Shown one piece after another: positions 30,110-58,557 of a DNA stretch of 64,000 bases. The notes below the pieces were generated by a model. The model had not been told where the DNA came from. It made no database searches and saw only the letters and a program-made list of their open reading frames with translations. The stretch spans positions 203,236,001-203,300,000 of the forward strand of contig NC_042997.1 of assembly GCF_006345805.1 (NCBI RefSeq), given 5' to 3'. Both the position numbers and the translations under genes were made by a program. Positions within the stretch are counted from its first letter, which is position 1; the number at the start of each line of letters is the position of its first letter. Source of the stretch: Octopus sinensis (Eukaryota).

Positions 30110-30140
<31 letters not shown>

Positions 30141-33100: not shown

Positions 33101-33111
33101 ATATACACACA

Positions 33112-33149
<38 letters not shown>

Positions 33150-33205
33150 TAGTAATGCAATACTAGAGTATTGCTTTCCAGTAAAGAATAGCCCATGAGG
33201 GAAAA

Positions 33206-33534: not shown

Positions 33535-33559
33535 ATATATATATATATATAAGAAGACA

Positions 33560-35800: not shown

Positions 35801-35844
<44 letters not shown>

Positions 35845-35866
35845 CATGTGTGTGTGTGTATTATAA

Positions 35867-35899
<33 letters not shown>

Positions 35900-37093
35900 G
35901 CAACAGTTGTTCTTTTGTCATTCCAGACAACATTCGTTATGAAAAGTTGATGTAACTATTTTCTGCCCTGCCTATTGCAGTTAAAGCATAACATTTCCTG
36001 TTTTGGTGCTCTGACTGATTGGATAAAAGTGAAATTGGCAAAATAACAGATTAACTACTTTTAGTAGTTAATCTACAAATGAACATTGTATTCTCACTGT
36101 TTATTATTAGACAAGAGTTTCTGGGAATACAGAGATAGATCACTAGAAATAGTCGCAATAGGACTTAATCTGATCACAATAAAGTCAACAATAAAAGATT
36201 TGTTTTCTTACAGGCATGTAAACAGTGTGCTTATTTGCTGCTCTTTTTTGCTCATGTAAAAATACTAAAGTGCAGAGTATATGCTAGCAGAGAGTCTTGA
36301 AGAGCAGAGAATACATATTTCAACTACAAAAGCTGATGATCATTACATACAAATTTCTGTATGATTTTATATTATATTATACATATATATATAATTAAAC
36401 TGAAACTTGAGTTGCAAGACAAACTCTCAGCTTCAGCTTCAATAAAAACCATATCTTCTACACACACTATACACTCATATTGCATTTGTTCAACATATGA
36501 GTTATATATACTTTGAATGATAGACATGGAAGATGTCTATAATAGCTTTATTAGCACAACAATTGTTTTGGCTTTGTTCTGCACTGCTCCCTAGTGGGCG
36601 AAGAATGATGTAATGACATCAGATGCAAAAGCACAGTGCAAAAGAGCCTCACCAGGGGATGTAACATACTTCAAAAGTTACCAGATTTACATTTTATTTT
36701 CACTCCAAGTTAAATACTTGTGGTGAAATGCTAGCAGTTCAGACACATTTGGTTAAGTGAGGAAGATGTGGTCAGAAAGAAAATAAAAAAAAACTAAAAA
36801 CAAAAGAATGTAATGTAAATAGGGATGGGGTTGTGTTTATGGTTGTGGTCAAGAAATGCAAGATCCAAGAATCAAGGTGTAGGAAGAAAGTTAGCTTTAA
36901 GCAATCCATAAAAAATATAAAAAGCAACTTTCAGAAACAATAGTAGTTTATTAAGTCAGAAAGTTGTGAATTTTTTCCATATTGAAGTACAATAAGCTGA
37001 AAAAAATTAATTTATACTTCATGGTTGGCAGCCAGTGTTGCCAGGTATGCAAATAAAGATACAAGAGTCAAGGAATGGAGTAAATAAAATCTG

Positions 37094-37562
37094 GGTGAAG
37101 TGGCTGAGTTCCTTTTGAGTGGTGGACCTCATTGAGGCAAAGTGGCTGAGTTCCTTTCAAGTGATGGGCCTCATAGAAGTGAGGTGGCTGAGTTCCTTTT
37201 GAACGGGCCTCACAGAGGCAAGGTAGCTAAGTGCCTTTCAAGCGTTGGGCCTCATGGAGGCAAAGTGGCTGAGCTCCCTTCGAGTGCTGAGCCTCACGGA
37301 ATAATGACCAAGGCCTTTGGCATTATGTTGTGCTTAAGACCCATCAAGCCAAGCAAAATTGCAGCCATGGCAGATACTGGTATCAAGCAAATGGCATGTA
37401 AAAGCACCCATTACACTCTCAGAGTGGTTGGCATTAGAAAGGGGCATCCAACCATAGGAAACCATGCCAAATCAGACTGGATCCTGGCGCAGCCATCCAG
37501 CATGCCAACCAGGTCACACTATCAAACCCATGCCAGTATGGGCAATGGTTGATGATGATGAT
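37094..37562 (+). mobile_element. RTE 3' end with a 42-bp tandem array at its 5' side
   Basis: About five units of GAGGCAAAGTGGCTGAGTTCCTTTCRAGTG.TGGGCCTCA.., then the standard RTE 3' UTR and (GAT)n tail. Confidence 0.8.
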
Positions 37563-37599
37563 ATACACTTGCCATCTCTTCCTCTTTACTTTTTCTTAT

Positions 37600-38165
37600 G
37601 CTGTAAGAAATTGTGAGAAGCCATGTGCGTGTACCTTCCATGTCTAGCCATGGGTAAATATTACTTTGCTTGGAAATAGATGAAGGTTGGTGACAGGAAA
37701 GGCAACCAGCCAAAGAATTCTGATCCATGCAAGCATAGAAAAGTGAATGTTAAAACAATGATGATGACATTTATAGTATGAATAAGAGTAACTTTGTAGT
37801 TATGAAAGTCACCAACTATCTTTTATCTATTACTTGTCTCAGTCATTAGACTGCAGCCATGCTGGGGTACTGGCTTGAAGAGCTTTTAGTCAAACAAATC
37901 AACTCCAGTAAAAACAGGATATTTATTCCATCAGTCTCTTTTACCAACCTGCTAAGTTACAAGAACATAAACAAACCAACACCAGTTGTCAAGTGGTGGG
38001 GTGGAACAGCCACAAAGACGCACACACAACACACACAGATATATATATATTCAAGTTTCTTTCAGTTTCCACCCACCAAATCCACTCACAAGGCTATAGT
38101 AAAAAACACTTGCCCAAAGTGCCAAGCAGTGGGACTGAACCTAGAACCATGTGGCTGAGAAGCAA
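37600..38165. mobile_element. SINE tail fragment (+, 37600-37768) and full SINE family B (-, 37820-38165)
   Basis: Direct similarity to the other copies. Confidence 0.8.
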
Positions 38166-38779
38166 ACTTATGAGTTTATATTCAGTAAAATTTATAGAGG
38201 CACAAATTCCACCTACATATTTTTAAAGGAATTCATGTAACAAGTCAAACTAGCACACAACTATAAGTCATATGAAACCTCCATGGTCTGGGTGTGTCGT
38301 ATTTTATTCAAGTGATATGATATTCCAAGAATGAAGAAAACCATATTAAGACAACTCAAAGTTATTCAAATAATGTCTGATATTAAAGATGAGAAATAAT
38401 AATAAACTGCATGTTTCTGAATCAACTGTTAAGAATTTAGGGCCTTTTCTACATTCCTACTTTCAACAAACTTTAATACCATTTCAGAGATAAACAAAAT
38501 ATGTAAATTCTAAAAAATATATTTATCTCAAGCTCAAATTTTAAAATTAGCCTGTCTTTCCCTGCCACTTTTTTTTTGGGGGCATTTGCTCAAAAAGGAA
38601 AAGAAAAATGAAAATTATAAATTAAAGGATTTGTATAATCACATCTGAATGTTACATTTGTATAAATATTACATACTTTAGAGAAAATAAAAGCACAAAA
38701 GCTATATAACAAATCTAATGCCAGTTGACTTAAATTATCATCAGCCAAAAATTCTATAGTCAAGTCTTATCTTATTCAA

Positions 38780-39375
38780 CCCTTTTGTTACCATTGTTCA
38801 GTTAAAATATGTAACCTTTCTTTCAATTCATTTCTAAAATGATGAAGATCATGATCATTCTAATGACCAATTTTCCATACTTGCATGAGTTGGACAAAGT
38901 TTATTGAGGTAGATTTCCTATGTTCCTGATGCCCTTCCTGTTACCAATCCTCACCTGTCTCCTACTTTCCCATAGCCAGACATGTTTTTTCAGAATATTG
39001 TACAGCATCTTTTTAACTCAGACCTACAGAAAATATATATATAATCATCATCATCATTTAGTGTCTGTTTTCCATGCTGGCATGCGTTAGACAGTTTGAC
39101 TGGAACTGGTAAGCTGCACCAGGCTGCAGTCTGTTTTGGTTTGGTTTTTACAGCTTGATGCCTATCCTAATGCCAACCACTCCACAGAGTGTACTGGGTG
39201 CTTTTTATGTGTCACTGGCCACAGCTTTGACGTCTTTTCAAGCACAGCAAATCACCAAGTCTTTATCACTTGTCATTGCTTCTGTGAAACTTAACATCTA
39301 AAGATCATATTTCACCATCTTGTCCCACATCTTCCTAGGTCTACTTCTTCAGGTTCCCTCCACACTTAGTGTGTG

Positions 39376-39430
<55 letters not shown>

Positions 39431-39768
39431 TACACACACACATATATACATTACACAATTTTCTTTCCGTTTCCGTTTCCATCTACCAAATCCATTCACA
39501 AGGCTTCAGTTGGGCTGCGGTTGTAGCGCTAGATACTTGCCAAAGGTTTTATGCAGTGTGGCTTAACCTGAAACCATGTGGTCAGGAAGTAAAATTCTCA
39601 ATTACACAGTCACATCTGCACCTTCAGAACTAGGTAAAATAACTGCCATGATGAATGTGGTGTTTGGAACATAAACATGGAATGTTGGAAGTTTAGCTTA
39701 TATCACTTTAAAACAAGAAGTTTCTATCAGAATCAGAGTTGCACATGGGTGGATTGGTAGCAAAAGAG
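38780..39768. mobile_element. MITE P2 split by a SINE B that is itself interrupted by an RTE 3' fragment
   Basis: MITE left part CCCTTTTGTTACC (38780-38850) and right part GGTAAAATAAC..GGTAGCAAAAGAG (39630-39768). SINE B (-) tail 38860-38990 and head 39460-39620; RTE fragment (-) 39050-39360. Confidence 0.75.
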
Positions 39769-40124
39769 TTGAATATATATTTTTGATTAAGCATCTGGCT
39801 AAACTTTTTAAAGATAAACTGTCTCAAACACTAATACGGTACCCATAGAGTTATATTAAATATTTCCCAAATCCTGAATATTCTATTAAGATTATTTTAG
39901 TGAGTCAATCAAGTGTTCTGTGTGATAAACATCAATTAGGAGCAATATGAGTGAGGAAAGCAATAGTATAAAGAAGGAACTAAAAGATATTTAAATGAAA
40001 AGAGTATAAAGTTATGATATTGCTACTTTTGGAAAAGATATTAATGAAGAATAATGAAGAGAACTGACTTTACGTTTTGGACTTGGGTTAGTTCAAGAAT
40101 CACAATAGTCTTTATAATGTATAA

Positions 40125-40435
40125 AGGTATAGCTATGTGGTTAAGAGGCTTGCTTTGCAACCACATGGTTTCAAGTTCAGTCCCAATGCATGGCACCTTG
40201 GGTAAGTGTTTTTTATAGCCTTGAACCTACCAATGCCTTTTGAGTAAATATGGTTGACAGAAACTGTGTGGAACCCCTCGTACGTGTATACTGTCACACT
40301 GTTTGACAACCAGTGTTAATTTATTTGCATCCACTTAACTTAGCAGTTTGACAAAAAAAAAACTAATAGAATAAATACCATATTTTTAAAATAAATACTA
40401 GGATTGATTTGTTTGGTTAAACCCTTCAAGGTGTC
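40125..40435 (+). mobile_element. SINE family B (type 1 tail)
   Basis: GGTATAGCTATGTGGTTAAGAGGCTTGC..CAAGTTCAGTCCC..GAATAAATACC. Confidence 0.8.
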
Positions 40436-40808
40436 CATATTAACTTTATTTGAAAAATTCTAATGATATCCACTAAAACTATTTCTTTTTATTTGCAGTT
40501 GTTTTAATTTTAAAGAATAAAATTTTTAAAATTAAAGTATTTCTTACATTGGAACATTTTTTTTTTTTAATACCTGATGTTGAAATAAGTTAAGTCAATA
40601 AATCTTTTTTACTAGCAATGAAACACAAAATCATGTCTATGGAAGATTATAATGTGGGGATCCATTCGCAAGGGGAACACATTAAGCCAAAGTGAGATTA
40701 CTTTGGTTATTCATTTCTAAGATTTACATTAATTTAGTGTTTTCATGTTTCCCTATTCTGTGAAGCATGCATGTGTGCATGTGTGTGCATGGGTTCCTTT
40801 TGTATTAA

Positions 40809-41031
40809 CCCATTAGCATTCAGACTACTCAGTCAAAAGTAATGCTTATTCATTCACATTGTTCTGAATTAATCATGCATTATCTTGTAGCTTTGAGATT
40901 TCAATAATGTAATTGTTTATTTTTAGAATCACATTGTAGAATAGGTGTGACAGGCTGGATCTGGCTGGTATAATCATAAAACCAGGTAGAATGTTTTAGG
41001 GCCAGATAGGGTCAGTTTGAATACTTGAGGG
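40809..41031. mobile_element. TTAA MITE family P1 (piggyBac-like)
   Basis: TTAA|CCCATTAGCATTC ... GAATACTTGAGGG|TTAA. Confidence 0.85.
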
Positions 41032-41297
41032 TTAATATTAAGAAATTAGATTGGTGAAAGATTGAAAATGTGGCTAGGAGGTTGCCAAACAAAATTAAGC
41101 TGTATTATATAGTCTCTCTCTCTCTGCTTGTATGTGTAATTCGGCTCACATTGACCAAACCTGTGATCAATAGTATTACACCCATAAACATCACAGTGTG
41201 TCTGGGTCTACACTCAATGTGCTGTGATACCTCAGGTTGCTTCCTCATGCAGATGTGCGTGGTATGTTGGTTTCAGAAAAGCCAATTGAGGCATTAA

Positions 41298-41513
41298 CCC
41301 TTTTGTTATATTTTTGTTAACAATGCTAGCTTTGTTTTAATTAATTTTTTAAATAACGAAGAATTTAGTAAAATAACTTTCTAATTATTAAGCTGGAGTC
41401 TGGAACAATTTAGCATCAGAGTTTGATGGAACATGATAATTTAAACCACTTTAAAACAGTAAATCTACATCACAGAACCTAGAGCAGTCTGAGGCAGGTT
41501 GCTATCAAAAGGG
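41298..41513. mobile_element. TTAA MITE family P2
   Basis: TTAA|CCCTTTTGTTA ... TATCAAAAGGG|TTGA. Confidence 0.85.
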
Positions 41514-42605
41514 TTGAGTCAATAAAAGACCTGTCCATTCCATTACATTTGTGAGAACTGGGTTTTAAAGACTACTGTCTCCATTTTAAAGATGGTAATG
41601 ATTATATTGAGGGAGATTTAGCTGCTACATTTAATAGCTTCTTCAAGGAGGTCAACATTACAAGTTATTTTAACAGTTCCTCTTAAAATAAGCTGAGCTT
41701 TAAAAGATTTTGCTTTAAAAACATTAAGGAAAACATGTTGACATCAACATCTAAGCATTTAAAATCAAATATTACCTATGTTACTTATCTTTACATCTTT
41801 ATGTTGAATTATTCATTCAGACAATTAGATTGTAACTGCAATCTTGTGGTGCAGTATTTAATTAGTCCAGACCAATCTATACTGGTGTTTAACGAATCTA
41901 AATCTACGTAGGTGCATGTCTACTTAATTACCTCATCAACAGTCTGCTCACATTAGCCTGGTTTGGCACCAACTACAGGTGCTTTGTTTACAACAATAGA
42001 ATGTTAGTCATGGCTAGAGATTGCTAAAACAAAGGCTAAATCTAGATTCATGTTAATACACACTCATTCATGGTCCTTTCAGTAAATGCCAATTTTCTGG
42101 CTTAACTTTAAGTTATAATTTTATAGCCCCAAGACCAAGTCTGATTCATCTACATTTAGTATGGTAATAGTCACATTAGCATATCACCAGATACCAAAGG
42201 GTCATATTTGAAATTTTTATGTATTATAGATTTATTTAATGTCTGTTTTTTCTATGATATAATTAGACATATTATTGCAGCTGGATGCTTTTCCTGCCAC
42301 TCATCTGTAACTGTTTTGCAAGTAAGATCTTCACAGATCTTCAAAGGCAGACAATTACAGAAACACATAAACATACACACAAACATATACACATAACAGG
42401 CTTCCTTTTAGTTTTTATCTACTAAACAGAATTCAAGGCTGATTGTCTGGGGCTGGATGCACTTGCTGCAACCAAGATATTTTCCCCCATGACTGGACAT
42501 ATTTTTATGGAAGAATGGAAATGAAGGACACCATTTGTATGATGATAACTCATTTACAGTTACCATGCAATGTAAAAGTAAGGATACACACATACACAAC
42601 AGAAA

Positions 42606-43426
42606 TCTATATATATATATAAAAGAGAGATTCTGTCCGTTTGTGTTTGTTTGTCCCATAAAATGGAAGTAAATGGTTCAAGGGAGGCAACACTAATTGT
42701 GCACGATCCTATGACGAACTGCATTGAGGCAAATATTCTCACTGGTTGTGGTGAATGTGACACCGTTTTCGTTTCTCGCACTAGTTGTACCATCTAATGT
42801 CCCATTCAAATTTAAGCCCTTATAGTTTCCTATCCCACTTTCTTTTGCCATGAGCATTGATAAAAGTCATGGCCAAACACTGAAAGTTGCTGGATTGCAA
42901 CTTGAAGAACAAACAGAAGTTTGTATATGAAATGCATCTTTTTTTTTTCTACTTCAATTATTACATGTTTTTCTCTTATAGAATAAACACATACAGGACA
43001 AGTAAACCTAAATCTGACTGACAGGACACAACATTTGTAATTTCATTTCACTATTACTGATATTCCTAATCAAAAAAATGTCTACTAAAAAAAGACCACC
43101 AAACAAACCCACGACATGCAATGCTTTGTCTATATCTCCTATTATGCTATTGCCTAATTTGTCTCAACCAAAATTATGCAATGGTACAACGCTAATTGTG
43201 CATTGACAATAATACATACAACTCGCTTATTATTTTCATATAATGAATGAAGAGAAGTTCATGTACGAAATTGATCTTTTTTCTACTTCAAGTATTACAT
43301 ATTTTTCTCTGATAAAAATACACACATACAGGAGGAGTAAATTATATATATATAATAATACTTTGAATGTGACTCCTGAGAAACAGTAAAAGTAATTACC
43401 CAATCAACGATGAGTATTACTGCTAG
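42606..43426 (+). mobile_element. Internally deleted Helitron carrying a PIF1-type helicase C-terminal fragment
   Basis: A|TCTATATATA start and ..CAACGATGAGTATTACTGCTAG|T end. 42670-42915 reads IEANILTGCGECDTVFVSR/PSNVPFKFKPL*FPIPLSFAMSIDKSHGQTLKVAGLQLEE (cf. RepHel FAMSINKSQGQTLK motif). Confidence 0.85.
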
Positions 43427-43690
43427 TATGATAATAAAAGTAACCATGATAGTTGTAAACAAATATCATCTTCATGCCAGCAGTGTCCATTTCCAATAAA
43501 CATAAATATATAGAGAGAGAGAGAGCAAGTGCACACATGAAGACAGAAAGTGTTGCTGAGGATGTTACAGATGTGTAATGAAAGATTTCCAGATAATGGA
43601 CACGAGTTAGAATAAGAACAGCAATAAATGAGTGAAGAAAGAATAGTGCTTGTGTTTATTTTTAAAAAAAAAAAGATCATCCTGAAATAC

Positions 43691-43735
<45 letters not shown>

Positions 43736-43874
43736 GTGAGTAAACGAAAGAAGGGCACTAAACTCCATTGGCCAAAGACTAGCCAGGCAGAGTACCAAAG
43801 ATTCTGAATCAAACTGTTTTGAGGTGTGTGTGTATATATATATATATATATACATACACACACACACATATTAC

Positions 43875-44500
43875 TAATATACTGTGTGATTGTGAAGTTT
43901 GCTTTCCAACCACAGGGCTTAAAGGCTTAGTCCCACTACACAGGAACTTAAGCAAGTGTCTTCTACTATAGCCCCCAGATCAAGCAAAACCTTGTGAGTG
44001 GGCCTTGTAGATGGAACTTAAAAGAAGCCTATCATGTAGGTATGTATTTGAGAGAGAGAGAGTGTGTCCCCTGGCTTTTACATTATATAATAGCTGTAAA
44101 CAAATGTTACTGTCATGCAAACAATGTCTATTTCCAATATTCTGTGAAAACATGTCTAGCCATAGAGAAATATTCCCTTACTGGGAAATAAGTGAGGGGC
44201 AGTGACATGAAAGGTATTCTACTTTGGAAAATCTGCCTCAAAAAATTCTGTAACACACTTGCAAACATGAAAAAGCAGACATTAAAAGTCTCTCTCTCTC
44301 TCTCAACATCACATGAATGTTGCATAAGACATCATTCATTTCCTATGTTCAGCAGAAATGTGTCTGGCCTAGGGAAATATTACTTTAGTTGGAAACAGGT
44401 TGGAAACAGGAAGAGCATCCAACCATAGACAATCTATCTCAATAAACTGTCCAAACTATGCAAGCATGAAAAAGTGTACATTAAAACAATGATGATGATG
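43875..44500 (+). mobile_element. SINE family B followed by a second RTE-type tail
   Basis: Head 43875-44040, tail 44090-44290, duplicate tail 44300-44500 ending in (ATG)n. Confidence 0.75.
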
Positions 44501-45049
44501 AATATACACTAATTCATTATCAAATACAATACTAATTACAATTTCAGACATGTTCACTCTGCATGCTTTAAAGTCATTATTTTATTCAAACTTTATTAAT
44601 AGCCATATTTTCAACAGACTAAAATATTCAAATACAAAATTAGAAGCAAATAAATAAGCGTTTATTAAAGAATATCTTGGATTAAACACCAAGTTGAATT
44701 TTTCTTTTTTTCTTTTCCATTAAAAGGAACTGTTTTAACGAGAAGAATTGCCATCAAATCTATAAGTGAGAATTTATGAAACAAGGCGCCATTATTGGAG
44801 ACTGATTTAGCCATCAACAGTGGTTCTGAATTTTTTCTAACTTTCTTTCAACATTCCATTATTCTACATTAATTTTAATTATATTCAACTCAATATCTGA
44901 CAAAACTAAAGAATAAATCCTTAATCTTAATTAAAGAAAAGATACAATTTCTTAAAAATCAGTTCTAGACTAATAGTTCTGTTTTATGTGAGAAATAGCC
45001 GCCAGAAAGAAAAGCGAGACTTCAGTTTGATTTGTGCAATAAGTACCAT

Positions 45050-45400
45050 CATCGTCATTTTAACACCTACTTTTCCATCCTAGCATGGGTCAAACTTTCT
45101 ATGATCAGGTGCCCTTCCTAACACCAACCCTCACCCATTTCCAACCAAAGTAACATTACCTCACAACCAGACATTTTCACAGCAGACTGGAAACAAACGG
45201 CACCATTTATATGAAGGTGATGCTCATCCTCAATGTTGTATGATGTCAAAACAAGGAGGCACCTACAGGCAACAGTCTTTTAGTTTCTGGTCCAGTGGGT
45301 ATAGAAGAAAGCACATGCCCAAGGTGCTAACGGTGGGATTGATCCTAAAACCCCACAGTTGAGAGGCAAACTCCTTAACCCCACAGTCCTGCCTGCTCCT
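45050..45400 (-). mobile_element. SINE family B with RTE-type tail
   Basis: TTTTCCATCCTAGCATGGG tail and a head ending CCTGCCTGC. Confidence 0.75.
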
Positions 45401-45652
45401 ATGTAACAGTAAAATAAAATTTAAAACAAAGAAAACCTTCAGAATTATTTTTATTTTTTACCAGTTTGAAGACTTACTGAAAGTATTGCTTGTCTAAGTT
45501 TTACTGTATTCTTCAAATGGATGTGATTTGAGTAAAGGTTGCATAAAAAGAAAACCATCACTGAAATCATATCCAAGTGAGGAATGCTCAAGTTAACGTG
45601 AATCTTTAAGTCATTTATTCACTCACATATGCACATCTATCTATCTATCTAT

Positions 45653-45782
45653 ATAATAATAATGGTTTTTTTTGCAACAAGTTGCTTAACCACATACCGA
45701 AAATTTTAGAAATAGCAGCCAAAAGACTAGTAGTCTTTTGGCTGCTATTTCTAAACTTGTTGCAAAAAACCCTTATTATTAT
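45653..45782. repeat. Short fold-back element with perfect inner palindrome
   Basis: Inner 25-bp arms TTTAGAAATAGCAGCCAAAAGACTA-g-TAGTCTTTTGGCTGCTATTTCTAAA (45705-45755), outer arms of about 30 bp, and a 21-nt segment only in the left arm. Confidence 0.9.
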
Positions 45783-46907
45783 AATCATATAAATTTTTAC
45801 CGAAATACTACTAAGTGAAATTTGTTGATTTTATTAAATTAATTATATTTAACCCTATATCTATCTATATATATATATAGACACACACACACACATACAT
45901 ACATTTCTACTTTTTTTCAAGGTGCCAGGAAAAAAAGCAATTTAATCACCTCCAGTATATTACTGATATACATTTTATTAATTCTGAAAGCGTAAAGAGA
46001 GAGGCAAGACCACATGAACTTCTACTCAGACTAACGCCCTACCACATTAGATGCTGCAATAATTCTTTACCCCACTGCATTATCTCCTCCACTTTTTCCC
46101 CCATGTCTGCACAAGTATAACAACAGTGTCGCAACATGATTCAAAGCATATTATTTGACAATATAGCAGAGAGCTGATTTTTTTTTTCCTCTAAGAAAGC
46201 TTCAAAGACAGGGCTAGCCCCAGTTTAAGGCTGCAAGATGATTATTTTAGCAGCATACTTTTATAACAGTAAAGTCTCACATAAAAAATAAAAAAAAGAA
46301 AGAAAATGATAAAACAAAGACATGCAAAAGGGGGAATATTTGATCTGCAAGGATGAATCTGTTTTTCTGGGAGTTTCTCTCTTCCATCTCTTCTCTCTTT
46401 TTTTTTTTTTAAGGGAGGGGATCAAAGAAATTGATATTTAAGTCTCTTCTAGAATGCTATTTTTAACAACATGATTAATAATAAACTTATCTGGTTTCTC
46501 CAGTTTTTTTAACGATAAAAACTGTGGTTTCATGTATAATGTTAACATTACGTCAAGAATGGCCTTCATTATGTACACCACAAAACAATAGAATGGTGTG
46601 ATGTGTGAAAGATTAAAAGAGGGAATATGATAAACAGACATCATTAGTCACAGTATTGATAAAAAAAAACGCATTGATTATTTTGTTTAAAATTACAAAC
46701 TTCACTGAAAATTGAGTAAGGAGGGGGAGAGAGCAAAGGGGAAATAGGAAGAGATAATTCAAAATTCTAATTGAATGCAGTAATTAGTCAGTAATAACCA
46801 AACTTATTTCATAAGATATGAATTAAATTATAAACCACATACCAAGAGATGATAATAATTCTGTTCAGAAAACCAAGAGGTAAAACTTTAATCCATACAT
46901 ATTTCAG

Positions 46908-46940
46908 ACTTACCTAAAAACAGAAAAGAAACAAATTTAT
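46908..46940 (-). other. Candidate recursive splice site (3' splice site abutting 5' splice site)
   Basis: Minus strand ..AAATTTGTTTCTTTTCTGTTTTTAG|GTAAGTCTG: long polypyrimidine tract and AG immediately followed by GTAAGT; junction at 46914/46913. Not inside a recognisable repeat. Confidence 0.5.
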
Positions 46941-47017
46941 TTAAATATTAAATTATTAAACATAATTATAACAATTTATAATATCACAAATTACAATTAC
47001 ATATAACATAATATATA

Positions 47018-47657
47018 TCATCATCATCATCATTTAGCGTCTGCTTTCCATGCTGGCATGGGTTGGACGGTTCAACTGGGTCTAGGAAGCCAGAAGGCTG
47101 CACCAGGCCCAGTCTGATATGGCAATGTTTCTACGGCTGGATGCCCTTTCTAACGCCGACCATTCTGTGAGTGTAGTGGGTGCTTTTTACATGCCACCGG
47201 CACAGGTGCCAGACGGGGCTGGAAAACGGCCACAATCAGATGGTGCTTTTTACGTGCCACCGGCACGAGGACCAGGCGAGGCTGGCAATGGCCATATGAT
47301 TAAAACAAATAATTATGCACAATTAAAACAAGTTATAATTATCTTAGCTTTTGGACTGCAACCATGCTGGGACACAGCCTTAAGGCTTTGGTCAAACAAA
47401 CAGGCCCCAATATTTTATCAGGTCTCTTTTACCGAATTATTAAGTTACCAGAATGTAAACAAACCAATACCAGTTGCCAAGCAGAACAGGATAAGGACAA
47501 AGACACACACACACACTTGCACAGCAGGCTTCCACACAGTTTCAGGATCAAATTCACTCATAAGGCATTGGCTGGCTTGAGGCAGAAAACACAGTGGGAC
47601 TTAACTCAAAACCATGAGGTTGCAAAGCAGAAGTTTCTTAACCACACAGCCATGCCA
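47018..47657 (-). mobile_element. RTE 3' UTR fragment (47018-47295) and SINE family B (47345-47657)
   Basis: Reverse complements of the elements described at 9446 and 20330. Confidence 0.85.
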
Positions 47658-48699
47658 GTGTATTATATATAATTATAACAAATTATGATATGTATATACG
47701 TGTTCAACAAGTACATTAACCACAGAAGATGTACACATAGCTGAACCATATTGAGTTATGAGACTTAACCAAAAGCAACTGAAGTATGTGTATTTTTATT
47801 GTTGCATCAAGGAGATTGGGATTGTCTAATCCTTGAGTATATTTGCAGCCCATACATAAATCAATATAAATCACATGTAATGATTTCATGAAAGCCAAGG
47901 TTTTGGGGGCATTTTTGCAACATCATTTGGAATATTATCACAGAGTCGTAACAGTATTAGATGGTTGACATCAATGCTTCACTGTAGCTTCTAAAGCCAA
48001 GATTTTTTTTCACTCTTTCATGAATGTATTTCCTATAAGTAAATTGGCAATGTTTTTCTATAAATTTCCAATATAATGAAAATTTCAGAAAGTTTTGTCT
48101 AATAACTGCAACTTTATACATCCTTAAATATTATGCCGGTATTGACAAATTGAAGTTTCACAATATTATTTATGTTAAGCGATATTAATATAAATACGAG
48201 CACTTTGTTATGGTCTCAAGCAGGTTGGTTTTAAAAGGATTAAATAGCCAATATTGGGCTCTCTGAGCTCAAATCATGCCAACGTCAACTTTGCCTTTCA
48301 TCCTTTCAGAGTCAATAAAAAAAATAAAGGCAGTAATCAAACTGGCAGATTGGCAAAACTGTAGGAATGATCAGATACATTGCAGTGTCACTCCCAACAC
48401 TTTGTATTTTGAGTTCAAATCCTACCATAGACTTAATCCACCACCCAATTTAACACCAGCACCTGGCACTTTGGATGTCTTTGGTGGAATCCACTATGTT
48501 GCAGGCATTTGGGCCATGTCTTTGGTCTAAAGATACCTTCCGTCCTACCTCCTTCCCTCTCATTCACCAATCTCAGTGACCCCAACAAGGATCATGGGGA
48601 CTACCCTTCACTTCCCCACAAAAAGATTATAAAAAGGAAGTGGGGGACACAGGGCTATGCACCATTTTGTTATCTTGGAAGATGGTGAGAATAGCTTAA

Positions 48700-48927
48700 C
48701 CCTTTTGTTACCATATTTCAGTTGAAATATGCTGCCTTTATTGCGGTTAATTTTGAAAATATGAAAGAAGTTATGAAAATAACCCATTAATATGCAGGTA
48801 TTTGGAAAATAAAGTAGCATGGAATTTTTATGCAAGTGGTTTTTTTTTTATTTGGATCACTTTAAAACAAGAAGTTTGTACTGTGGATCAAAATTCCCAA
48901 GCAGGTTAGTATAAAAACTAAAAAGGG
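48700..48927. mobile_element. TTAA MITE family P2
   Basis: TTAA|CCCTTTTGTTACC ... AAAAGGG|TCAA. Confidence 0.8.
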
Positions 48928-49874
48928 TCAAGTAAAATGGATTCCACACAGCCTGAAGATGGGCTGTATGTGATTGTGTCTGCTCAACTTGCTGGAAATA
49001 AATCAAATATCCCACACATCACATATTACCATCTTAAATACAGAAAGAAAAAAAAGAACATGACAGCAGTGACATGGCTGAAACGAGTAAAAAAAATGAA
49101 ACACAGTCTGAGGAACAATATTCCTCCAAAAAAACTCCTGGATGGTCATGGCATAAACGAACTCAAGCAGGGTTAACTTGGGGTTAAACAACAACATGAA
49201 CACCATAAACAACAATATGAAAACCATATAACCATCAGATTTTTCTTTAACTCACTACAAAATTAAATCAGATAGGGAGAGGAACAAAATTGCTGAAATT
49301 ATAAAAACATTAGTTAGTCTTTTTAATTGCATCTGTCTTCTACTGATACTTGAGATCAATAAATTAGAACCATTATTCAAAATAGTAACTCCAAATACAT
49401 TGATTATTACTGTAATCAATCCATATAAATTTTATTTTTGTTTCAATACACATATTACATAATATGTAATGCATGGCCAGCCAAATAACTATTACACCTT
49501 TTGGGTTTGAAAACCATACAAGTGGATTATCACGCCCCATTAGGAGGTGATAGAGTAATGATAATGATATTAGGAAAGATACTATTTTAGTATCATCATC
49601 ATCACCATCAGGCTATAAAATCTATTTTCATATAAATGTGTAGAAATTATTCATGAACTTGACAAATATAAAAAATTTCTAAATCTAAACAAAATATTCC
49701 CCTGGCATTTGCAACAATCAATTTCTAAAATTACATGCTTGCTGAACCCTTCACTGTAGTGAGAAAGAAGAAGTGAGAAAAATATTTATTTGAAAGCAGG
49801 ATTCTATATTATTTCTGAATTCTGAAATAGGAAATCATTCAGTTCCCTTGTATTATATATTGTGATCGTTAGTG

Positions 49875-50015
49875 AACGTTTGAAGGCCTAGTGGTTAGCG
49901 TGTTAGGCCTGTGATCATTAATCTGATTCCTGGATAGGGAATCATGTGCCCTTGAGCAAGGCACATAATTCCTCATTGCTCCAGTTTCATTAAATGAAAT
50001 GAGTACCTGCAAAGT
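49875..50015 (+). mobile_element. SINE family A 5' fragment
   Basis: GGCCTAGTGGTTAGCG..CCCTTGAGCAAGGCAC..TTGCTCCAG..ATGAGTACCTGC. Confidence 0.65.
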
Positions 50016-50304
50016 ACTGGTACAAACTCTCTCTTCTTTTCCACGGGGTCAAAAGGTTGGGAGGGCCAAGAGTGTGTCTATGTCTGTTCACAACATTAAA
50101 GAATTAGTGAAACCATGGTACATAGTTACTAAACTTTCTTTTCTGAGTGTGAGTCATATACGGATTACAATTCAGAAAAGTAAATAAAGATAAATTTGTG
50201 TCATTCAAAAGCATAAAAATCTCTAATAATCATATTCTAGTCATCTGATAAAATAATATAAAGTGAGTTCTCATACAAGATTTATATTTTATTATGTTAG
50301 AGTA

Positions 50305-50470
50305 AAGCTAGACATGACCATGTAGTTAAGAAGATCACTTTCCAATCACACAATTTCAGGTTCAATCTCACTGCGGCACACATTGGAAAAGTGTCTTCAA
50401 CCATAGACCTAGGCCAACCAATACCTTGAGAAAGAACCAAGTAGGCGAAACAGTATGGAAATGTGTGCAT
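50305..50470 (+). mobile_element. SINE family B head, decayed
   Basis: CATGACCATGTAGTTAAGAAG..CAGGTTCAATCTC..AAGTGTCTTC. Confidence 0.65.
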
Positions 50471-50769
50471 TTGTGTGGTGCTTTACATGAGAAACAGCAA
50501 CAAGCTACAAATGGTGTTTGATGACATTTTCTATCAAGAAGTCATTTACTTGCTCTACACTTTCAGAAATGAGAGGAATGAGAAGTCCCTTACTTGGAAA
50601 ACAACAGAAGGATGGATCAGCAACAGAAAGGGTATGTGGCTGCAAAACAATGTCTCAGTAATCACATGACTGTCAGCATGGGGCAGAGGGGAAATGGACA
50701 CAAATGAAGGAACAAGTCTAACATAGCACACCATAAAGTAACAGATTAAAATGAGGTGAATACACTCAC

Positions 50770-50795
50770 CAAAATTTATTCTCATCAATAGCATT
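50770..50795 (-). other. Candidate 26-nt microexon
   Basis: Minus strand TTAATACTTTTACAG|AATGCTATTGATGAGAATAAATTTTG|GTGAGT; two open frames (NAIDENKF or MLLMRINF). Confidence 0.35.
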
Positions 50796-51473
50796 CTGTA
50801 AAAGTATTAACCCATTAATAAAACAAATCTAATTGAATCCGATAAGACGAGAAATATATCTTAATTAGCTCAATAGTAATCCCCATAGTGCTACTACTAG
50901 ACTAATTAGCTGTCAAGTAATCCCCATGGTGCCTGTGCCAGTCCACACTTAGTATTCAAGTAGATACCTAGTGATAGGACTAAGGAGTTTGCAGGACTGA
51001 GCTAGTCAATATACAAAGTTTTGTATTACATTTCTGGCATTATACGTGATCAAATAGGGTGTTTAAGATGACATTCACTGCTATGGTACTTCATATCACG
51101 TATCTTTAGCAACAATTTAGTGTTAATAGATTATGTATGCTAATACTACATAAACTAGCTAATGCAATTATTTAGATGTTTAGAATAAGACATGTATACA
51201 CACACACACACACACACAGGTATATACATACCATCAATAGCCAAATAATAGATATATATTATTTGAGAGCAGAATAAAACAGGAGATTTTATATGTCTTT
51301 TTATTATAACATCATAAATTATAAAAACTCTATTAATTTTCAAAAGAGAATGGAAAGACAAATTAGGTCAAGTAACTGATTGGATATACATGGAATGCTA
51401 AGAATCATTGGTTAATTGCTATGCTATATCATTCAAAATAGCAGTTCATATATCTATGTATGTATAAAATTGG

Positions 51474-51790
51474 TGCTCCATTGGTTATGACAAGGGTTCC
51501 AGTTAATCCGATCAATAGAACAGCCTGCTCATGGAATTAATGTACAAGTGGTTGAGCACTCTACAGACATGCTTACTCTAAACATAGTTGTCAAGGAGAT
51601 TCAGTGTAATGTAGAATGCAACAAAGCTGACCCTCTGAATTGCAAGTACAACTCATTTTTACTAGCTGAGTGGATTGGAGCAACATGAAATAAAGTGTCT
51701 TGTTCAAGGACACAATGCATCACCGGGAATCAAACTTACGACCTTATGATCTTGAGCCAAATACCTCTAACCACTAAGTCACACACTTTC
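51474..51790 (-). mobile_element. Full-length SINE family A
   Basis: Reverse complement of the 28597-28906 element over its full length. Confidence 0.85.
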
Positions 51791-52829
51791 ACTTCTCTGT
51801 GTGTATGTGTGTGTGCGCGCACATGCATATGAAAATATATATTATATAGATACACACACACATATACAGAATATCTATGAAGTAGACAAATTAATTTTGG
51901 CTAAAACACAATTACTCTTCATGCATCAACCATACAACAGATGGAATTATTAGGCCTGCTCTTTCAACCAATGAAAATATACCAATCTCCAAACATCCTT
52001 TTGAAATAGAAAACCATATTGTTGAAGAGGAAATACTTTAAGAGAGGAAATATTATTTAAGTCAAAATGTGGTTCACTGAATAGCAGAATGACATTAATA
52101 ATTTGTTCTACTGAAACAAACAGGAATTGGTCAAAGTATGAAAGTTAACTCACTAACATTAACTACCCAGCACTCATTCAGGTGATTCTAATTAATAAAA
52201 AAAAAAAAAAAGAGGAGTGGGGGATATCTCCCACTGACATTAATACATTGTAAAAACAACCATTTTCCAAATAAACCTTTGCCTTCCTGTCTTGTTATAT
52301 TTTCAGTTAGTTTTGTTTCAGAACAGTTAAAACATTTGGCCCCCAAATACGTGGTAACACACTATTAAATAAGCATTTTATTCCAGATTAGGTCGGAGGA
52401 AACTAAAAGAGCAGAAGTAATTGCCAGAGATCATGCAGTTGAAGTTCAGTTTCTGCTTGATAAAATTTAATCCAAACCATACAAATATTTCATAGCCAAT
52501 TGATTCTTGCTGATAGATTCATTCAATAAATACACCATTAAACAGCAGACATTTATGACAAATGCAGTTTTGAAAAGAAATACAGATTTATTGATGAGAG
52601 AATTGCATTGTTATGAAACAAACATTCAGTCTACATAGTAAGATCATGTTTATTCCACCTACACACTGCTTCATCAAGCATTTTCACCCCCACATCTCAT
52701 TCCCTTTCACTCACCACTTGTCTATCTATGGAACTATTTGGCTGCTGTAGTCACGGCAGCCAAATAGAAAACTAGGCAAATAGAAACTGTATAGAAGTGT
52801 ACCAAAACAGATTGTAACCATAATTAAAA

Positions 52830-53330
52830 AAGCACAGCCTTGTCACAGAATGTCACATTGGTTATACATGAGAATTACATTAAGGATACATGTATTTTTG
52901 GAATACTCAGCCACTATTCCAAAAATATATTTGATGTATACATCAACCAATTGGAAGAAATGATGAATGAACTTGCAATTAAACAACTGAGATTGGTCAA
53001 TAGAGACAGGCCAATTCTCTTGCAAGACAATGCTCGACATGTTGCACAAAAACGCTACTCAAGTTACAGAAATTGAACTTAGTACTGTTATCCACCATAT
53101 TCATGAGACCTTGCATCATGTTTTTCAAGCATTAGACAACTTTCATGATTTCATCACTTCTTGCTCTCTAGAATTCTTCACTGCTGGCATAAATAAGCTA
53201 CCAATAAAAGGGCAAAATTGTGTTGATAATTTAGGCACACACTTTGATTAACTGCACTGCTTTTTGTTGAGATAAAGTAAAATAAACCAAGTTCAAAATC
53301 AGACATTTCATTCTTAATGACCACATATAT
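52830..53330 (+). pseudogene. Mariner (DD34D-type) transposase C-terminal remnant
   Basis: YINQLEEMMNELAIKQLRLVNRDRPILLQDNAR(P)HVAQ..HVFQALDNF..FFTAGINKLPIKGQNCVDNLGTHFD*, followed by a probable right TIR. Confidence 0.85.
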
Positions 53331-53633
53331 CGTATATACATGCATACATACATACATACACAACTATATATACACACAAGTACAATGAGAGATGTCTGCC
53401 ATGGTGTGGGTCCCACCACTTTTACAAAAAAAAATAATTACGGAAAACAAACTCTGTATTATATGTGGTAAATATAATTGTGTATAACAATGAGATGCCT
53501 AATACATATATCAATGAAGCCAACTTTCTATGTTCAGTAAATTTTGTGGTGCTTGAAGATATTGTAATATTTATAAGTATTACTAAGAGGTCCCCGACTT
53601 GGCTGTCCACAGCAAAATGAGTTACAGCAGGAG

Positions 53634-53664
<31 letters not shown>

Positions 53665-53666
<2 letters not shown>

Positions 53667-54046
53667 ATTTTAAGTTGGTTTTTCTATGCTAACATGGATT
53701 AAACAGATTATTGAAGCATTGTTTCCCTTCTCTCTCGTCAGTTAGCCTTTACCAGTTTTTCAAGTCAGAGATATCCTCAGAGGTACCAAAGCAAGCAGAT
53801 GACTCATTTGCAAGGGAAATGACAACAATGTCATAGCCTGTAGTTGAGCGATTTGGGGAGAAGAGCAGATGTACACCATACAAAGAAGAGACATACACAT
53901 GCATGCAGCAATGGTTATCTTGCAGTTTCTATCAACCAAGTCCATTTTGGCTTGAGGCTATAGAAAAAAACACCTGAGGTGTCACACAGTGAGACTGAAC
54001 CTGGAACCAAGTTGGAGAGAAGAATACATCTTAACCACACAGCTAC
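53665..54046 (-). mobile_element. SINE family B, old
   Basis: Head GTAGCTGTGTGGTTAAGATG on the minus strand with a decayed RTE-type tail. Confidence 0.65.
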
Positions 54047-55255
54047 TGAATTGCAGTTGGTTGTGAGAAAATAGGAATTTGTGACAGATTTTCAAAAAGC
54101 TATAAAGGAATGGTTAACTGGATCCAAGTTCCAATAATTAGGTAGATTACTTCTTATCATGAAAGAAAGACTTCCTTTACACAGAGTTGAAAGATGGACA
54201 TGTTAGTGCTCTAACAGCATTTTTTCGTTATGTTATTGCATTTAACAGCAATTCACCAAAGTGAAAAATGACCTTTCAGTGTTTGTAGAAAAAAATTAAT
54301 GTACAAAACTGTTCAGAATAGCAAATCTTAACTTGCCTATCACACAATGAACTGTATGTTTATAATGAAACATTGTCAGGGTGTCAGAATATATCAAAAG
54401 TGAAGCAGTCTTGAAATATAAAGAAATCACTAAAACCAATAAAAAAAAATTTAAAAAAGCAATGAATGAGATCATAGTTTTTGTTTGTTTATTTTATGAT
54501 GATGATGATTTTGTTTCCTAGGAAGTAATCCAAATGGTACTTTTTATAGCGATATATCAATCTAGATTGATGTCTGATATTTACTAATGGCCTTCGACAA
54601 GGCCATTTAATTTATTCTTAGTTCAATTGTGTAATTCTAAAATAGAATTTTGAACTTTTCTTCAATAGTTACAATTCAATGTAATTTATATATTTTAAGC
54701 ACAAATACATGACTAGATTAAGTGAGGAATCAAACTCAGTCACTTGTACACTATCCAAATTTTTTTGTCTCATAAAAACCTTTTCTAGTTTCAACCAAAT
54801 CATCTTCACACCAAGTACAGGGTCTCTTCTGAGAAGCATATGCAGGACTATATCCAAAATATGGTGAATCTGAAGAGGGAGTGTTATGAAGGATGTAACT
54901 GCACAGATTCTGAAGGGCCAGACATGTTGCAAGGCCCACAGACAACAAGTGGACCCATGCAAGTGTCAAGCAATGTACAAGAGATCAAAAGTGACCACTC
55001 AAAAGACTGCCAAGATGTTAGGAGGAAGACAATCAAGCAATTCAAGTCCAAACACAAGAGTTTTCAAATCTGATCTTGAATCTGTATAAAAGCAATAAAC
55101 TAGAACATGAAATAAACAGACAAAATTCCCAATTAGATTTCACATGCTTTTAATTGTTGTGGGACATAATGCAAATTATAAAATATATGCAAAGATTGAG
55201 ATCTTTAACTGAGAATTTGAAAGTTGAAAAAAGAAAAAAAAAAGTGCTAGTGTTG

Positions 55256-55293
<38 letters not shown>

Positions 55294-55513
55294 ACTAAAT
55301 ATCTCCTCATCAACATCAGTTTTGAATGTCCACTTTTCCATGCTTGCTTAGGTCAGATGAGATTCATTGAGGCAAAATTTCTGTGGCTAGATGCTCTTCT
55401 ACTTGCCAAAGATATTGCAAACAAATTTCACTGCTTTTACAACAGTGAAAGTTAGTGTGCAGCACTAAAACAAGAGGGAGACACACACAATGATAAGCTT
55501 TCCAGTTTCCATT

Positions 55514-56124
55514 TGGAAGGAACCTGCGGCAGATGTAGACCCAGGAAGACATGGGATGAGGCGGTGAAGAATGACCTTCAAACATTTGGCCTCACAGAGA
55601 CTGGGACCTTTGAAGATATGCTGTGTTTGATAAGACCTGGCAAATAAAGTGAGATCACAGACATGGCCAATGCCAGTGTTGCATAACTGGCCTATTTAAA
55701 AGTACCCTTGAAACGTCAGGCAATATGATGTGCTTGAGAAGACTTGTTGAGTCAAGTGAAATCAAAATCGTAGTTGTGACCAGTATTGCCTGACTGGTAC
55801 CTGTGCTGGTGGCACATAATGAGCACCAGTCAAGTGTGGATCGATGCCAGTGCCCCCTGACTAGCTCCCATGCTGGGAGCACATGAGCAGCACCATTCAA
55901 GTGTGGTTGATGCCAGTGCCTCCTGACTGGCTCCCATGCCGGTGGCACATAAAAAGCACCCACTACACTCTCGGAGTGGTTGGCATTAGGAAGAACATCC
56001 AGCTGTAGAAACCTTGCCAGATCAGATTGGAGCCTGGTGCAGCCTACTGGCTTGCCAGTCTTCAGTCAAACCATCCAACCTATGCTAGCATGGAAAGCAA
56101 ACATTAAATGAAGATGATGATGAT
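55514..56124 (+). mobile_element. RTE LINE 3' end: ORF C-terminus plus complete 3' UTR
   Basis: GTCGRCRPRKTWDEAVKNDLQTFGLTE..YAVFDKT (RGRP.KTW motif), three about 62-bp UTR subrepeats, GGAAGAACATCCAGCTGTAGAAAC, (GAT)n tail. Confidence 0.85.
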
Positions 56125-56689
56125 TTACAAAGATCACTCACAAGGCTTTGGCTGGCTTACCACTATAACAGAATGCATTTACCCAAAGTACCACACAATG
56201 GGACTGAATCTGAACCCATGTGACTACAAAGTGAACTTCATAACCACACAGCCCTCATTATACTGAGTTTAATTACTACTTTTGAAGAGACTCGGCTAAT
56301 AAATAAGATGAGACTAAAAATGTTGGTGATATAGAGGAAGCAATAAAAACAGTGTCAAGAGCACCATCATCAATTACAATGATAGTGACAACATAATAAA
56401 TAATTCAGTCAAAACACCTCCCAAACCACCATACCTGTCCACCATTAATAAAACTTGCAAAGAAACAAGATGAGATTTATCAAATTTGTCAATCTTTAAT
56501 ATATTCAAATTTTATTCTGCCGTTGCTGAACTGGCTGGAATCTCTTCTGTAATCCAGTTTGCATTGATTTTAAAGATCTTTTAATCATTTGAATTATATT
56601 TATCATGCCACCACAAAATACAGATTTTACTGTTTTTAAAAATGGTAATTTGGCTTGGTGGAATCTTGTCAGTGATCAGATCATAGACT

Positions 56690-57000
56690 ATCATTTGTTT
56701 TCATGCTGGAATGGGTTGGACAGTTCAATAGTAGCAAGTGAGCCAGAGAACTATCCCAAGCTCCAATGTCTGCTTTGGCATGGTTTCTACAGCTGAATAC
56801 CATTCCTAATGCCCAACTTTATAAAATGTCTATAGCACTGGCACCAGTGAGGTTACTAAGTACTACCAAGATTAGACCCCCCTCAACTGAGAGGGGAGGG
56901 GGTAATAGTGAGGTAGGTTGCTTTATGTCAGGTAATGAAAGGTTAAAGTATGATGGGATGGAAACAGGTGTCAGGTGGAAAAGAGACAGGAGAGAAGATG
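56690..57000 (-). mobile_element. RTE-tailed element
   Basis: CATCAT..TTTTCATGCTGGAATGGGTTGGAC..TTTCTACAGCTG; purine-rich counterpart of the CT-rich body at 14385. Confidence 0.7.
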
Positions 57001-57019
57001 CTTCCGGGGGATACCCTCA

Positions 57020-57500
57020 TGTACAACAAAATTTAACAGTACAGTATACAACAATGTTCCTCCAAGGAGATTCCATAAAAACGCTGATGTTCCACAAGGA
57101 GTGCCTTCAATGTAGAAGGCACAACTTTTCACTCACCTCAACCTTCTGCACCCAGGTGTCATCCACACTCAAAATACAAATATTTTTCAGTAGTCATGCC
57201 TCATTATGAATGAGCAATGGACTTCAGGACATTCTTCAATGGGCTAACATGATAACAGTGTGAAAACACAATCACCAGACCTAAAAAGCAAAACAACCCT
57301 TGTACCCCACTCTCTAATCATAACATCAAAAACCCTTAAAATTACTACTAATATTAGGGGTTACAATTTCTGATAACCTCTCGCAGTAACTCCATGATTA
57401 AACTGAAACACAAAAGACTAGGATCCCTCTATAGGGTAAGAAAATTCTTCAGTCCCCAGTTGCTGATCCACATGAGAGTATTGCACACATATGTAAGAGA
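57020..57500 (+). pseudogene. CR1/Zenon-like reverse transcriptase remnant
   Basis: KNADVPQG (cf. AGVPQGS), LQDILQWAN, LGVTISDNLS, LGSLYRVRKFFSPQLL in the expected order. Confidence 0.65.
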
Positions 57501-58531: not shown

Positions 58532-58557
58532 ACATTGACCGAAAGATATTCTCTTTA
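58532..58557 (+). other. Candidate 26-nt microexon (plus strand)
   Basis: TTTACCTGCATTTTTCTTGCAG|ACATTGACCGAAAGATATTCTCTTTA|GTAAGT; strong acceptor and donor, two open frames. Confidence 0.35.

What the first reader, a model, noticed from the sequence alone, without database searches (positions are those of the whole stretch)
46908..46940. Textbook recursive-splicing (ratchet point) signature on the minus strand
Seen: AT-rich branch region, a T-rich tract of about 20 nt, then TAG|GTAAGT (junction 46914/46913) in non-repeat sequence. Established: juxtaposed YAG|GTRAGT sites mark zero-length exons used to remove very long introns stepwise in Drosophila, and related RS sites occur in long vertebrate neuronal genes. 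I know of no characterisation of recursive splicing in cephalopods, whose introns are long. Inference: the 64-kb window lies within a giant intron of a minus-strand gene processed recursively. The candidate microexons at 50770 and 29616 are on the same strand.
Basis: partly seen in the sequence, partly recalled or inferred. Interest (0 to 1): 0.75.

Follow-up and report, generated by a model that had tools for sequence, protein, structure and literature searches.

The report
Likely recursive splice site, octopus alpha-catulin
A back-to-back "end of intron / start of intron" signal sits on the sense strand in the middle of a 170-kb first intron of the alpha-catulin gene. Genome-wide counts suggest such signals are real stepping stones for removing giant introns in this cephalopod, but no RNA read yet shows this one in use.

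Summary
The motif is real. On the minus strand, TTTGTTTCTTTTCTGTTTTTAG|GTAAGT has its junction at 46914/46913, is single copy in the 2.72-Gb genome, and is the best juxtaposed acceptor|donor among 1670 AGGT in 264 kb.

The whole window lies in intron 1 (about 169.5 kb) of a minus-strand alpha-catulin (CTNNAL1-like, vinculin family) gene. The site is 103.8 kb after exon 1 and 65.7 kb before exon 2.

The bare 8-mer occurs at chance rate. The full motif class (Y10-N-Y5-AG|GTAAGT) has 98 copies genome-wide, against 11-22 in four controls. The sites cluster in same-strand groups: 7 adjacent pairs within 310 kb, all same strand, 0.9 expected. They also carry a second donor 28-63 nt downstream, as at Drosophila ratchet points with cryptic RS-exons. 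Our site has a modest one (TTG|GTATGT at +71).

Direct evidence is missing. Only assembled contigs were available, and they show no junction there. Conservation could not be tested. The two proposed microexons are unsupported.

Verdict: probable (about 0.6) intronic recursive splice site. It is a new member of a known kind, in a phylum where the searched literature reports none.

The parts
46915..46940 (-). Acceptor half: pyrimidine tract (TTTGTTTCTTTTCTGTTTTT) ending in the A of TAG. With 46914 it forms the recursive 3' splice site.
   Evidence: sequence; 18 of 20 pyrimidines; 3'ss score 7.2 bits on a rough matrix recalled from memory.
46908..46914 (-). Junction: G of AG at 46914, followed by GTAAGT (46913-46908). 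This is the regenerated 5' splice site (ratchet-point donor).
   Evidence: donor score 10.4 bits; unique in the genome.
46941..46990 (-). AT-rich branch region with TTAAT motifs whose A lies at -35 and -43. It is part of a 125-nt stretch free of AG.
   Evidence: The branch-point assignment is inferred, not shown.
46843..46913 (-). Candidate cryptic RS-exon, 71 nt. It is open in the intron's frame but shifts the frame if included.
   Evidence: Proposed by analogy with the class signature and with PMC8605326.
46836..46845 (-). Candidate RS-exon donor TTG|GTATGT at +71. At 5.5 bits it is weaker than the ratchet-point donor.
1..64000 (-). The whole window is part of intron 1 of the alpha-catulin-like gene. 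Exon 1 lies at about +150.7 kb and exon 2 at -18,821..-19,010 in window coordinates, both outside the window.
   Evidence: No exon-1-like peptide was found between -19 kb and +64 kb.

Best explanation
The site is an intronic recursive splice site (ratchet point) in the 169.5-kb first intron of the octopus alpha-catulin gene. Proposed mechanism: once RNA polymerase has passed it, the pyrimidine tract and TAG, probably together with the weak donor 71 nt downstream (cryptic RS-exon definition), are recognised as an acceptor. Exon 1 is then spliced to position 46913, removing the first 103.8 kb. This places the end of exon 1 next to GTAAGT and so recreates a strong donor. That donor outcompetes the weaker RS-exon donor and is spliced to exon 2, removing the remaining 65.7 kb and leaving no trace in the mRNA. 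Shown here: the motif, its uniqueness, the strand, the intron context, and the genome-wide non-randomness of the motif class. Inferred: that this particular site is used, the branch point, and the role of the +71 donor.
For: (1) Motif and single-copy status. (2) Context: exon 2 at L020:990-1179 on the minus strand has clean ttatag|ATA...GCAG|gtaagt borders and matches the vinculin family at E 1.2e-8. Full-length orthologues are named alpha-catulin. Twelve colinear minus-strand exon matches span C1:203047294-203386770. Exon 1 encodes EIRTKSVEHT at C1:203386709-203386737 on the minus strand. This gives an intron 1 of about 169,507 nt with the site 61% of the way along it. (3) It is the best juxtaposed acceptor|donor of 1670 AGGT in 264 kb on both strands. 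(4) Class enrichment: Y10-N-Y5-AG|GTAAGT has 98 sites. Controls give 19 with GAATGT, 11 with the AG-to-GA swap and 22 for the reversed pattern. Y12-N-YAG|GTAAGT has 151, against 52, 20 and 45. In unselected sequence AGGTAAGT is not commoner than AGGAATGT (7 vs 13). (5) Class sites cluster on one strand: 7 adjacent pairs within 310 kb, all same strand, 0.9 expected. The control set has none. (6) In 26 other non-repeat class loci the best donor at +20..+110 is far stronger than in null tiles: 8 bits or more in 35% vs 4.3%, Mann-Whitney p 9e-7. Of the 14 donors scoring 6 bits or more, 11 lie at +28..+63. This matches the roughly 50-nt cryptic RS-exons of Drosophila (PMC8605326). (7) At our site the ratchet-point donor (10.4 bits) beats the +71 donor (5.5 bits), and the 71-nt exon would shift the frame, as is typical of cryptic RS-exons.
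Against: There is no RNA evidence. In four runs laid on 45000-50999 no joint or loose end is listed at 46913/46914. Those data are assembled contigs of runs only guessed to be RNA, so they cannot show rare intermediates, strand or a saw-tooth. Some 11-22 of the 98 class sites are expected by chance, and about 7 belong to a repeat family. The downstream donor at our site is only at the class median, and roughly 15-20% of null tiles score as well. The site has no same-strand partner within 1 Mb, and no other strict-motif site is listed in this intron. Conservation in other cephalopods was not testable. The splice-site matrices were recalled from memory and are human-like, not trained on octopus.
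Confidence: 0.6

Rival explanations
1. Chance juxtaposition: a T-rich tract in AT-rich intron sequence happens to be followed by AGGTAAGT, and the spliceosome ignores it or uses it only as noise.
For: The bare 8-mer occurs at the composition-expected rate. Controls imply 11-22 chance sites among the 98 of this class. No junction was seen. The downstream donor is mediocre. The T>A skew of the sense strand itself makes pyrimidine tracts commoner there.
Against: 76-89% of non-repeat class members are in excess of chance. The site is on the sense strand of the longest intron of a 339-kb gene, where true sites are expected and only a minority of random sites would fall. It is the best site in 264 kb.
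Confidence: 0.2
2. It is the acceptor of an expressed alternative exon, with the 71-nt segment 46913-46843 or another acting as a poison or regulated cassette, rather than a silent zero-length ratchet point.
For: An acceptor plus a donor 71 nt downstream make a legal exon. It is open in the intron's phase but shifts the frame. Expressed RS-exons are known in flies and mammals (PMC8605326, PMC6224609).
Against: The mollusc and bird orthologue proteins need no residues between exons 1 and 2. No spliced contig ends there. The ratchet-point donor is much stronger than the +71 donor, which predicts skipping.
Confidence: 0.12
3. It is a U1 snRNP binding or decoy site that protects the long intron from premature cleavage and polyadenylation, with the upstream tract incidental.
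For: A perfect GTAAGT lies on the sense strand of a very long intron. U1 telescripting is established in long vertebrate genes (general knowledge, not tested here).
Against: The genome-wide excess needs the AG: swapping AG to GA drops the count from 98 to 11. A pure U1 site would not require that. A downstream second donor is also not predicted.
Confidence: 0.05

Closest known systems
Drosophila intronic ratchet points (Ubx, kuz, Bx; about 200 zero-nucleotide sites, Duff et al. 2015; cryptic RS-exons, Joseph et al. 2018 and 2021, PMC8605326)
   Same: Long pyrimidine tract plus YAG|GTAAGT. Sense strand of a very long intron. A short out-of-frame cryptic exon with a weaker downstream donor. At class level, several sites lie on the same strand in one region.
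   Different: A different phylum (Mollusca). The intron is far longer than typical fly cases. The candidate RS-exon is 71 nt with a weak GTATGT donor. Use and conservation are not demonstrated.
Vertebrate recursive splicing in long neuronal genes (Sibley et al. 2015; Zhang et al. 2018, PMC6110456)
   Same: It lies in the first, longest intron (over 150 kb) of a long gene. The RS-exon definition model applies.
   Different: Only a handful of fully silent sites are known in vertebrates (nine noted definitively, per PMC8605326). Here the strict motif alone shows about 80-130 excess sites. Alpha-catulin is not among the classic examples as far as I know.
EJC-repressed annotated RS-exons (Blazquez et al. 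2018, PMC6224609)
   Same: An exon starting with a 5'ss-like sequence that can be re-spliced after joining to the upstream exon.
   Different: Those are constitutive or annotated exons kept in the mRNA. Here the orthologue proteins show no exon at this place.

Membership tests
Intronic recursive splice site (ratchet point) | Juxtaposed strong acceptor (pyrimidine tract + YAG) and donor (GTRAGT) with zero nucleotides between them | tested here: met
   TAG|GTAAGT, 18 of 20 pyrimidines, top of 1670 AGGT in 264 kb.
Intronic recursive splice site (ratchet point) | Lies on the sense strand inside a very long intron | tested here: met
   intron 1 of minus-strand alpha-catulin, about 169.5 kb, split 103.8 kb and 65.7 kb.
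Intronic recursive splice site (ratchet point) | Short cryptic RS-exon closed by a downstream donor that is weaker than the ratchet-point donor | tested here: inconclusive
   TTG|GTATGT at +71 scores 5.5 bits against 10.4 bits. The feature is present but weak, and about 15-20% of null tiles score as well. The class as a whole shows it strongly (p 9e-7).
Intronic recursive splice site (ratchet point) | Splicing intermediates: upstream exon joined to the GT, lariats, saw-tooth in total or nascent RNA | tested here: inconclusive
   only Logan contigs of runs guessed to be RNA. No joint or loose end is listed at 46913/46914. Contigs cannot show rare intermediates or depth profiles.
Intronic recursive splice site (ratchet point) | Evolutionary conservation of the SA|SD motif amid poorly conserved flanks | not testable with these tools
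Organism D is only about 2% diverged, and its contig over the site is not listed.
Intronic recursive splice site (ratchet point) | Motif class occurs more often than chance in the genome, in a strand-consistent way | tested here: met
   98 against 11-22; 7 of 7 adjacent pairs within 310 kb on the same strand.
Alpha-catulin (CTNNAL1), vinculin family PF01044 (host gene) | Colinear exon matches to full-length alpha-catulin orthologues and to the Pfam profile | tested here: met
   12 exon matches cover residues 4-626 of a 636-aa mollusc orthologue. The best named hits are alpha-catulin of Patella vulgata and of birds.

The most novel reading that the evidence does not exclude
This octopus genome uses Drosophila-style zero-nucleotide recursive splicing with cryptic RS-exons at a hundred or more sites, several per giant intron. 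The alpha-catulin site is one of them. This would be the first case in Lophotrochozoa, and it would argue that the mechanism is ancestral to bilaterians or arises wherever introns become giant.
Probability: 0.6. Interest if true: 0.65.

Novelty: new member of a known kind. Interest (0 to 1): 0.55.

Why it matters
Recursive splicing has been characterised in insects and vertebrates. In the held literature no paper links it to cephalopods or octopus. Cephalopod genes have very long introns, so how they are removed accurately is an open practical question.

The counts made here give a short, testable list: about 100-150 strict-motif sites, with same-strand clusters on C13, C8, C15 and C18. The alpha-catulin intron 1 is a concrete locus where one RT-PCR or a total-RNA library would settle the matter.

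If confirmed, the shared feature of a cryptic exon about 50 nt long would extend the unified RS-exon model to a third major animal lineage.

Tried and rejected
(1) Pfam scan of the eight ORFs of 110 aa or more in the window gave no hits, so there is no coding gene inside the window.

(2) Regex searches for an exon-1-like peptide between -19 kb and +64 kb found nothing. Exon 1 was then found at +150.7 kb.

(3) The word-based protein search with exon 2 returned only exon-sized ORF calls without the N-terminus. The representative search was therefore used.

(4) T>A skew around 29 other class sites agrees with the motif strand in 23 of 29. I do not count this, because choosing pyrimidine tracts itself favours the T-rich strand, and control loci could not be cut out.

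Other recursive sites in the first 87 kb of the intron were therefore checked only through the strict-pattern lists, and none was listed.

(8) The microexons at 50770 and 29616 are rejected as coding exons (see the interpretation check).

(9) A literature search combining several taxon words was badly constrained and gave nothing useful.

Exons were searched one by one by reference, and the joined step was left out.

Full report
**Observation**

The minus strand reads ...AAATAAATTTGTTTCTTTTCTGTTTTTAG|GTAAGTCTGAAAT. Eighteen of the 20 bases before the AG are pyrimidines. The preceding 125 nt contain no other AG and carry two TTAAT motifs, at -35 and -43. The 27-mer across the junction occurs once in the 2.72-Gb assembly. 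Contig depth over 46800-46999 is single-copy. A very high-copy repeat starts at 47017, so the AT-rich "branch region" is the gap between that repeat and the tract.

**Is it more than chance?**

- The bare 8-mer is not unusual. AGGTAAGT occurs twice in the window.
- In 264 kb of unselected sequence it occurs 7 times on both strands, against 13 for the same-composition AGGAATGT and 5 for AGGATAGT.
- With the pyrimidine tract it is rare. The pattern Y10-N-Y5-AG|GTAAGT, which this site fits, has 98 matches in the genome.
- The site is the top-scoring juxtaposed acceptor|donor among 1670 AGGT in the 264 kb I could read. The scoring matrices there are rough and recalled from memory.

**Gene context**

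No ORF in the window has a Pfam hit. A crude exon finder run on the window plus 200 kb of left flank gave minus-strand exons resembling the vinculin/catenin family.

- **Exon 2.** The exon at L020:990-1179 (window coordinates -18,821..-19,010) has clean borders, ttatag|ATA...GGCAG|gtaagt, and matches PF01044 positions 18-79 at E 1.2e-8. PDB alpha-catenins align weakly to the same residues.
- **Orthologues.** An exhaustive search with this exon returned full-length orthologues. Their sources name them alpha-catulin, in Patella vulgata and in birds.
- **Gene extent.** Searching the genome with the 636-aa mollusc orthologue gave 12 colinear minus-strand exon matches from C1:203047294 to 203386770.
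- **Exon 1.** Exon 1 matches residues 4-44 at C1:203386648-203386770. A back-translated pattern places EIRTKSVEHT at 203386709-203386737 on the minus strand.
- **No exon 1 inside the window.** No exon-1-like peptide exists between -19 kb and +64 kb.
- **Intron geometry.** Intron 1 is therefore about 169.5 kb and contains the whole window. The site lies 103.8 kb after exon 1 and 65.7 kb before exon 2. The exact exon 1 donor is inferred from the orthologues' ...PLVTQ end, because I could not read that DNA.

The + strand shows A>T skew of about 0.05 in 25 of 27 10-kb bins. The skew is about 0 in the two bins beyond the last coding exon. This is consistent with a T-rich sense strand.

Exons were searched one by one by reference.

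**The motif class genome-wide**

| Pattern | Matches |
|---|---|
| Y12-N-YAG + GTAAGT | 151 |
| Y12-N-YAG + GAATGT | 52 |
| Y12-N-YAG + GATAGT | 20 |
| Y12-N-YAG + GTAAGT, pattern reversed | 45 |
| Y12-N-YAG + GTGAGT | 46 |
| Y12-N-YAG + GTGAGT, pattern reversed | 22 |
| Y10-N-Y5-AG + GTAAGT | 98 |
| Y10-N-Y5-AG + GAATGT | 19 |
| Y10-N-Y5-GA + GTAAGT (AG swapped to GA) | 11 |
| Y10-N-Y5-AG + GTAAGT, pattern reversed | 22 |

Both halves of the motif are therefore needed for the excess. About 76-89% of non-repeat class members exceed chance.

- **Repeat family.** One family (L030, L032, L044) carries the motif and accounts for about 7 sites.
- **Clustering.** The sites cluster. Seven adjacent pairs lie within 310 kb, all on the same strand, against 0.9 expected. 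Eleven pairs lie within 1 Mb, ten of them on the same strand. The control set has no such pairs. The paired sites differ in sequence, so they are not duplications.
- **Second donor.** In 26 other non-repeat loci the best donor at +20..+110 is much stronger than in null tiles of the same loci and strand: 8 bits or more in 35% vs 4.3%, p 9e-7. Of the 14 good donors, 11 lie at +28..+63.

This is the architecture described for Drosophila ratchet points: a tandem acceptor|donor with a cryptic RS-exon of about 50 nt, usually out of frame, closed by a weaker donor (PMC8605326).

**This site against the class**

Its donor scores 10.4 bits. The best downstream donor is TTG|GTATGT at +71 (5.5 bits), close to the class median of 6.2. 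The 71-nt segment is open in the intron's phase but would shift the frame. It has no same-strand partner within 1 Mb. No other strict-motif site is listed in this intron.

**RNA evidence**

No run holding the stretch is on record as RNA, and all are kept as assembled contigs. I laid four runs on 45000-50999. Short, low-depth, unspliced contigs cover parts of the intron. No joint or loose end is listed at 46913/46914.

This neither supports nor refutes use of the site. Contigs drop rare intermediates and give no depth profile. Organism D's contig appears to cover the site with no listed difference, but it is only about 2% diverged and the table was truncated. Conservation is therefore untested.

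**Microexons**

The orthologues run straight from ...PLV(T/S)Q to ITTL(V/I)N. The 26-nt (50795-50770) and 14-nt (29616 region) candidates would break the frame. Unspliced contigs run through 50770. Neither candidate is supported.

**Mechanism and verdict**

The most likely reading (about 0.6) is a silent intronic ratchet point. Exon 1 is first spliced to 46913. The regenerated CAG- or CAA-type end of exon 1 plus GTAAGT then acts as a donor and is spliced to exon 2, so the 169.5-kb intron is removed as 103.8 kb and then 65.7 kb.

| Rival explanation | Probability |
|---|---|
| Chance juxtaposition | 0.2 |
| Expressed poison or cassette exon | 0.12 |
| U1 decoy site | 0.05 |

Literature searches found no paper linking recursive splicing to cephalopods or octopus. 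This is a new member of a known kind. The genome-wide signature is the more interesting by-product.

Noticed in passing
window 47017-47280; also 48284-48320, 48600-48800, 45600-45800: Very high-copy interspersed repeats, with summed contig depth of 1e4-1e6 in all four runs. The first ends about 100 nt upstream of the site and is bordered by an (ATC)n / AT-rich stretch at 47010-47035.
   Followed up: no
window coordinates -46860..-46432 (L017, minus) and -10523..-10059 (L020/L021, plus): Two inverted copies of a LINE/RT-like ORF (…LVRPILEYGIQASSPYLLKDIQHLERVQRLATRMV…) lie inside introns of the alpha-catulin gene.
   Followed up: no
L030, L032, L044 (C2:130458643, C2:155779614, C4:112999231): A repeat family carries polyY-CTAG|GTAAGTATAAT itself. 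It accounts for roughly 6-7 of the 98 class sites and should be masked in any genome-wide count.
   Followed up: partly
window coordinate -60355, minus strand (L015): A second juxtaposed site on the gene's sense strand, TTTAATTTCCAG|GTAAGTAA, lies 2.7 kb after exon 3 in a 32-kb intron. No strong donor is obvious downstream.
   Followed up: partly
G000 C13:49.51-50.62 Mb (minus, 4 sites); C13:4.21-4.38 Mb (plus, 3 sites); C8:24.38/24.51 Mb; C15:39.15/39.29 Mb; C18:51.55/51.76 Mb: Same-strand clusters of the strict recursive-site motif. They are likely giant genes with several ratchet points each and are the best places to look for saw-tooth RNA profiles.
   Followed up: partly
264 kb, C1:203036001-203300000: The + strand A>T skew is about 0.05 across the gene body and falls to about 0.00-0.01 in the two 10-kb bins beyond the last coding exon. 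The sense strand of this gene is T-rich, as in transcribed regions of other animals.
   Followed up: partly
G000 C2:11.57-11.65 Mb (+) and C7:91.87-91.98 Mb (+): The two other vinculin-family genes of this genome, probably alpha-catenin and vinculin. The C2 gene's exon 1 encodes DIRTKSVEKT at 11570479.
   Followed up: no
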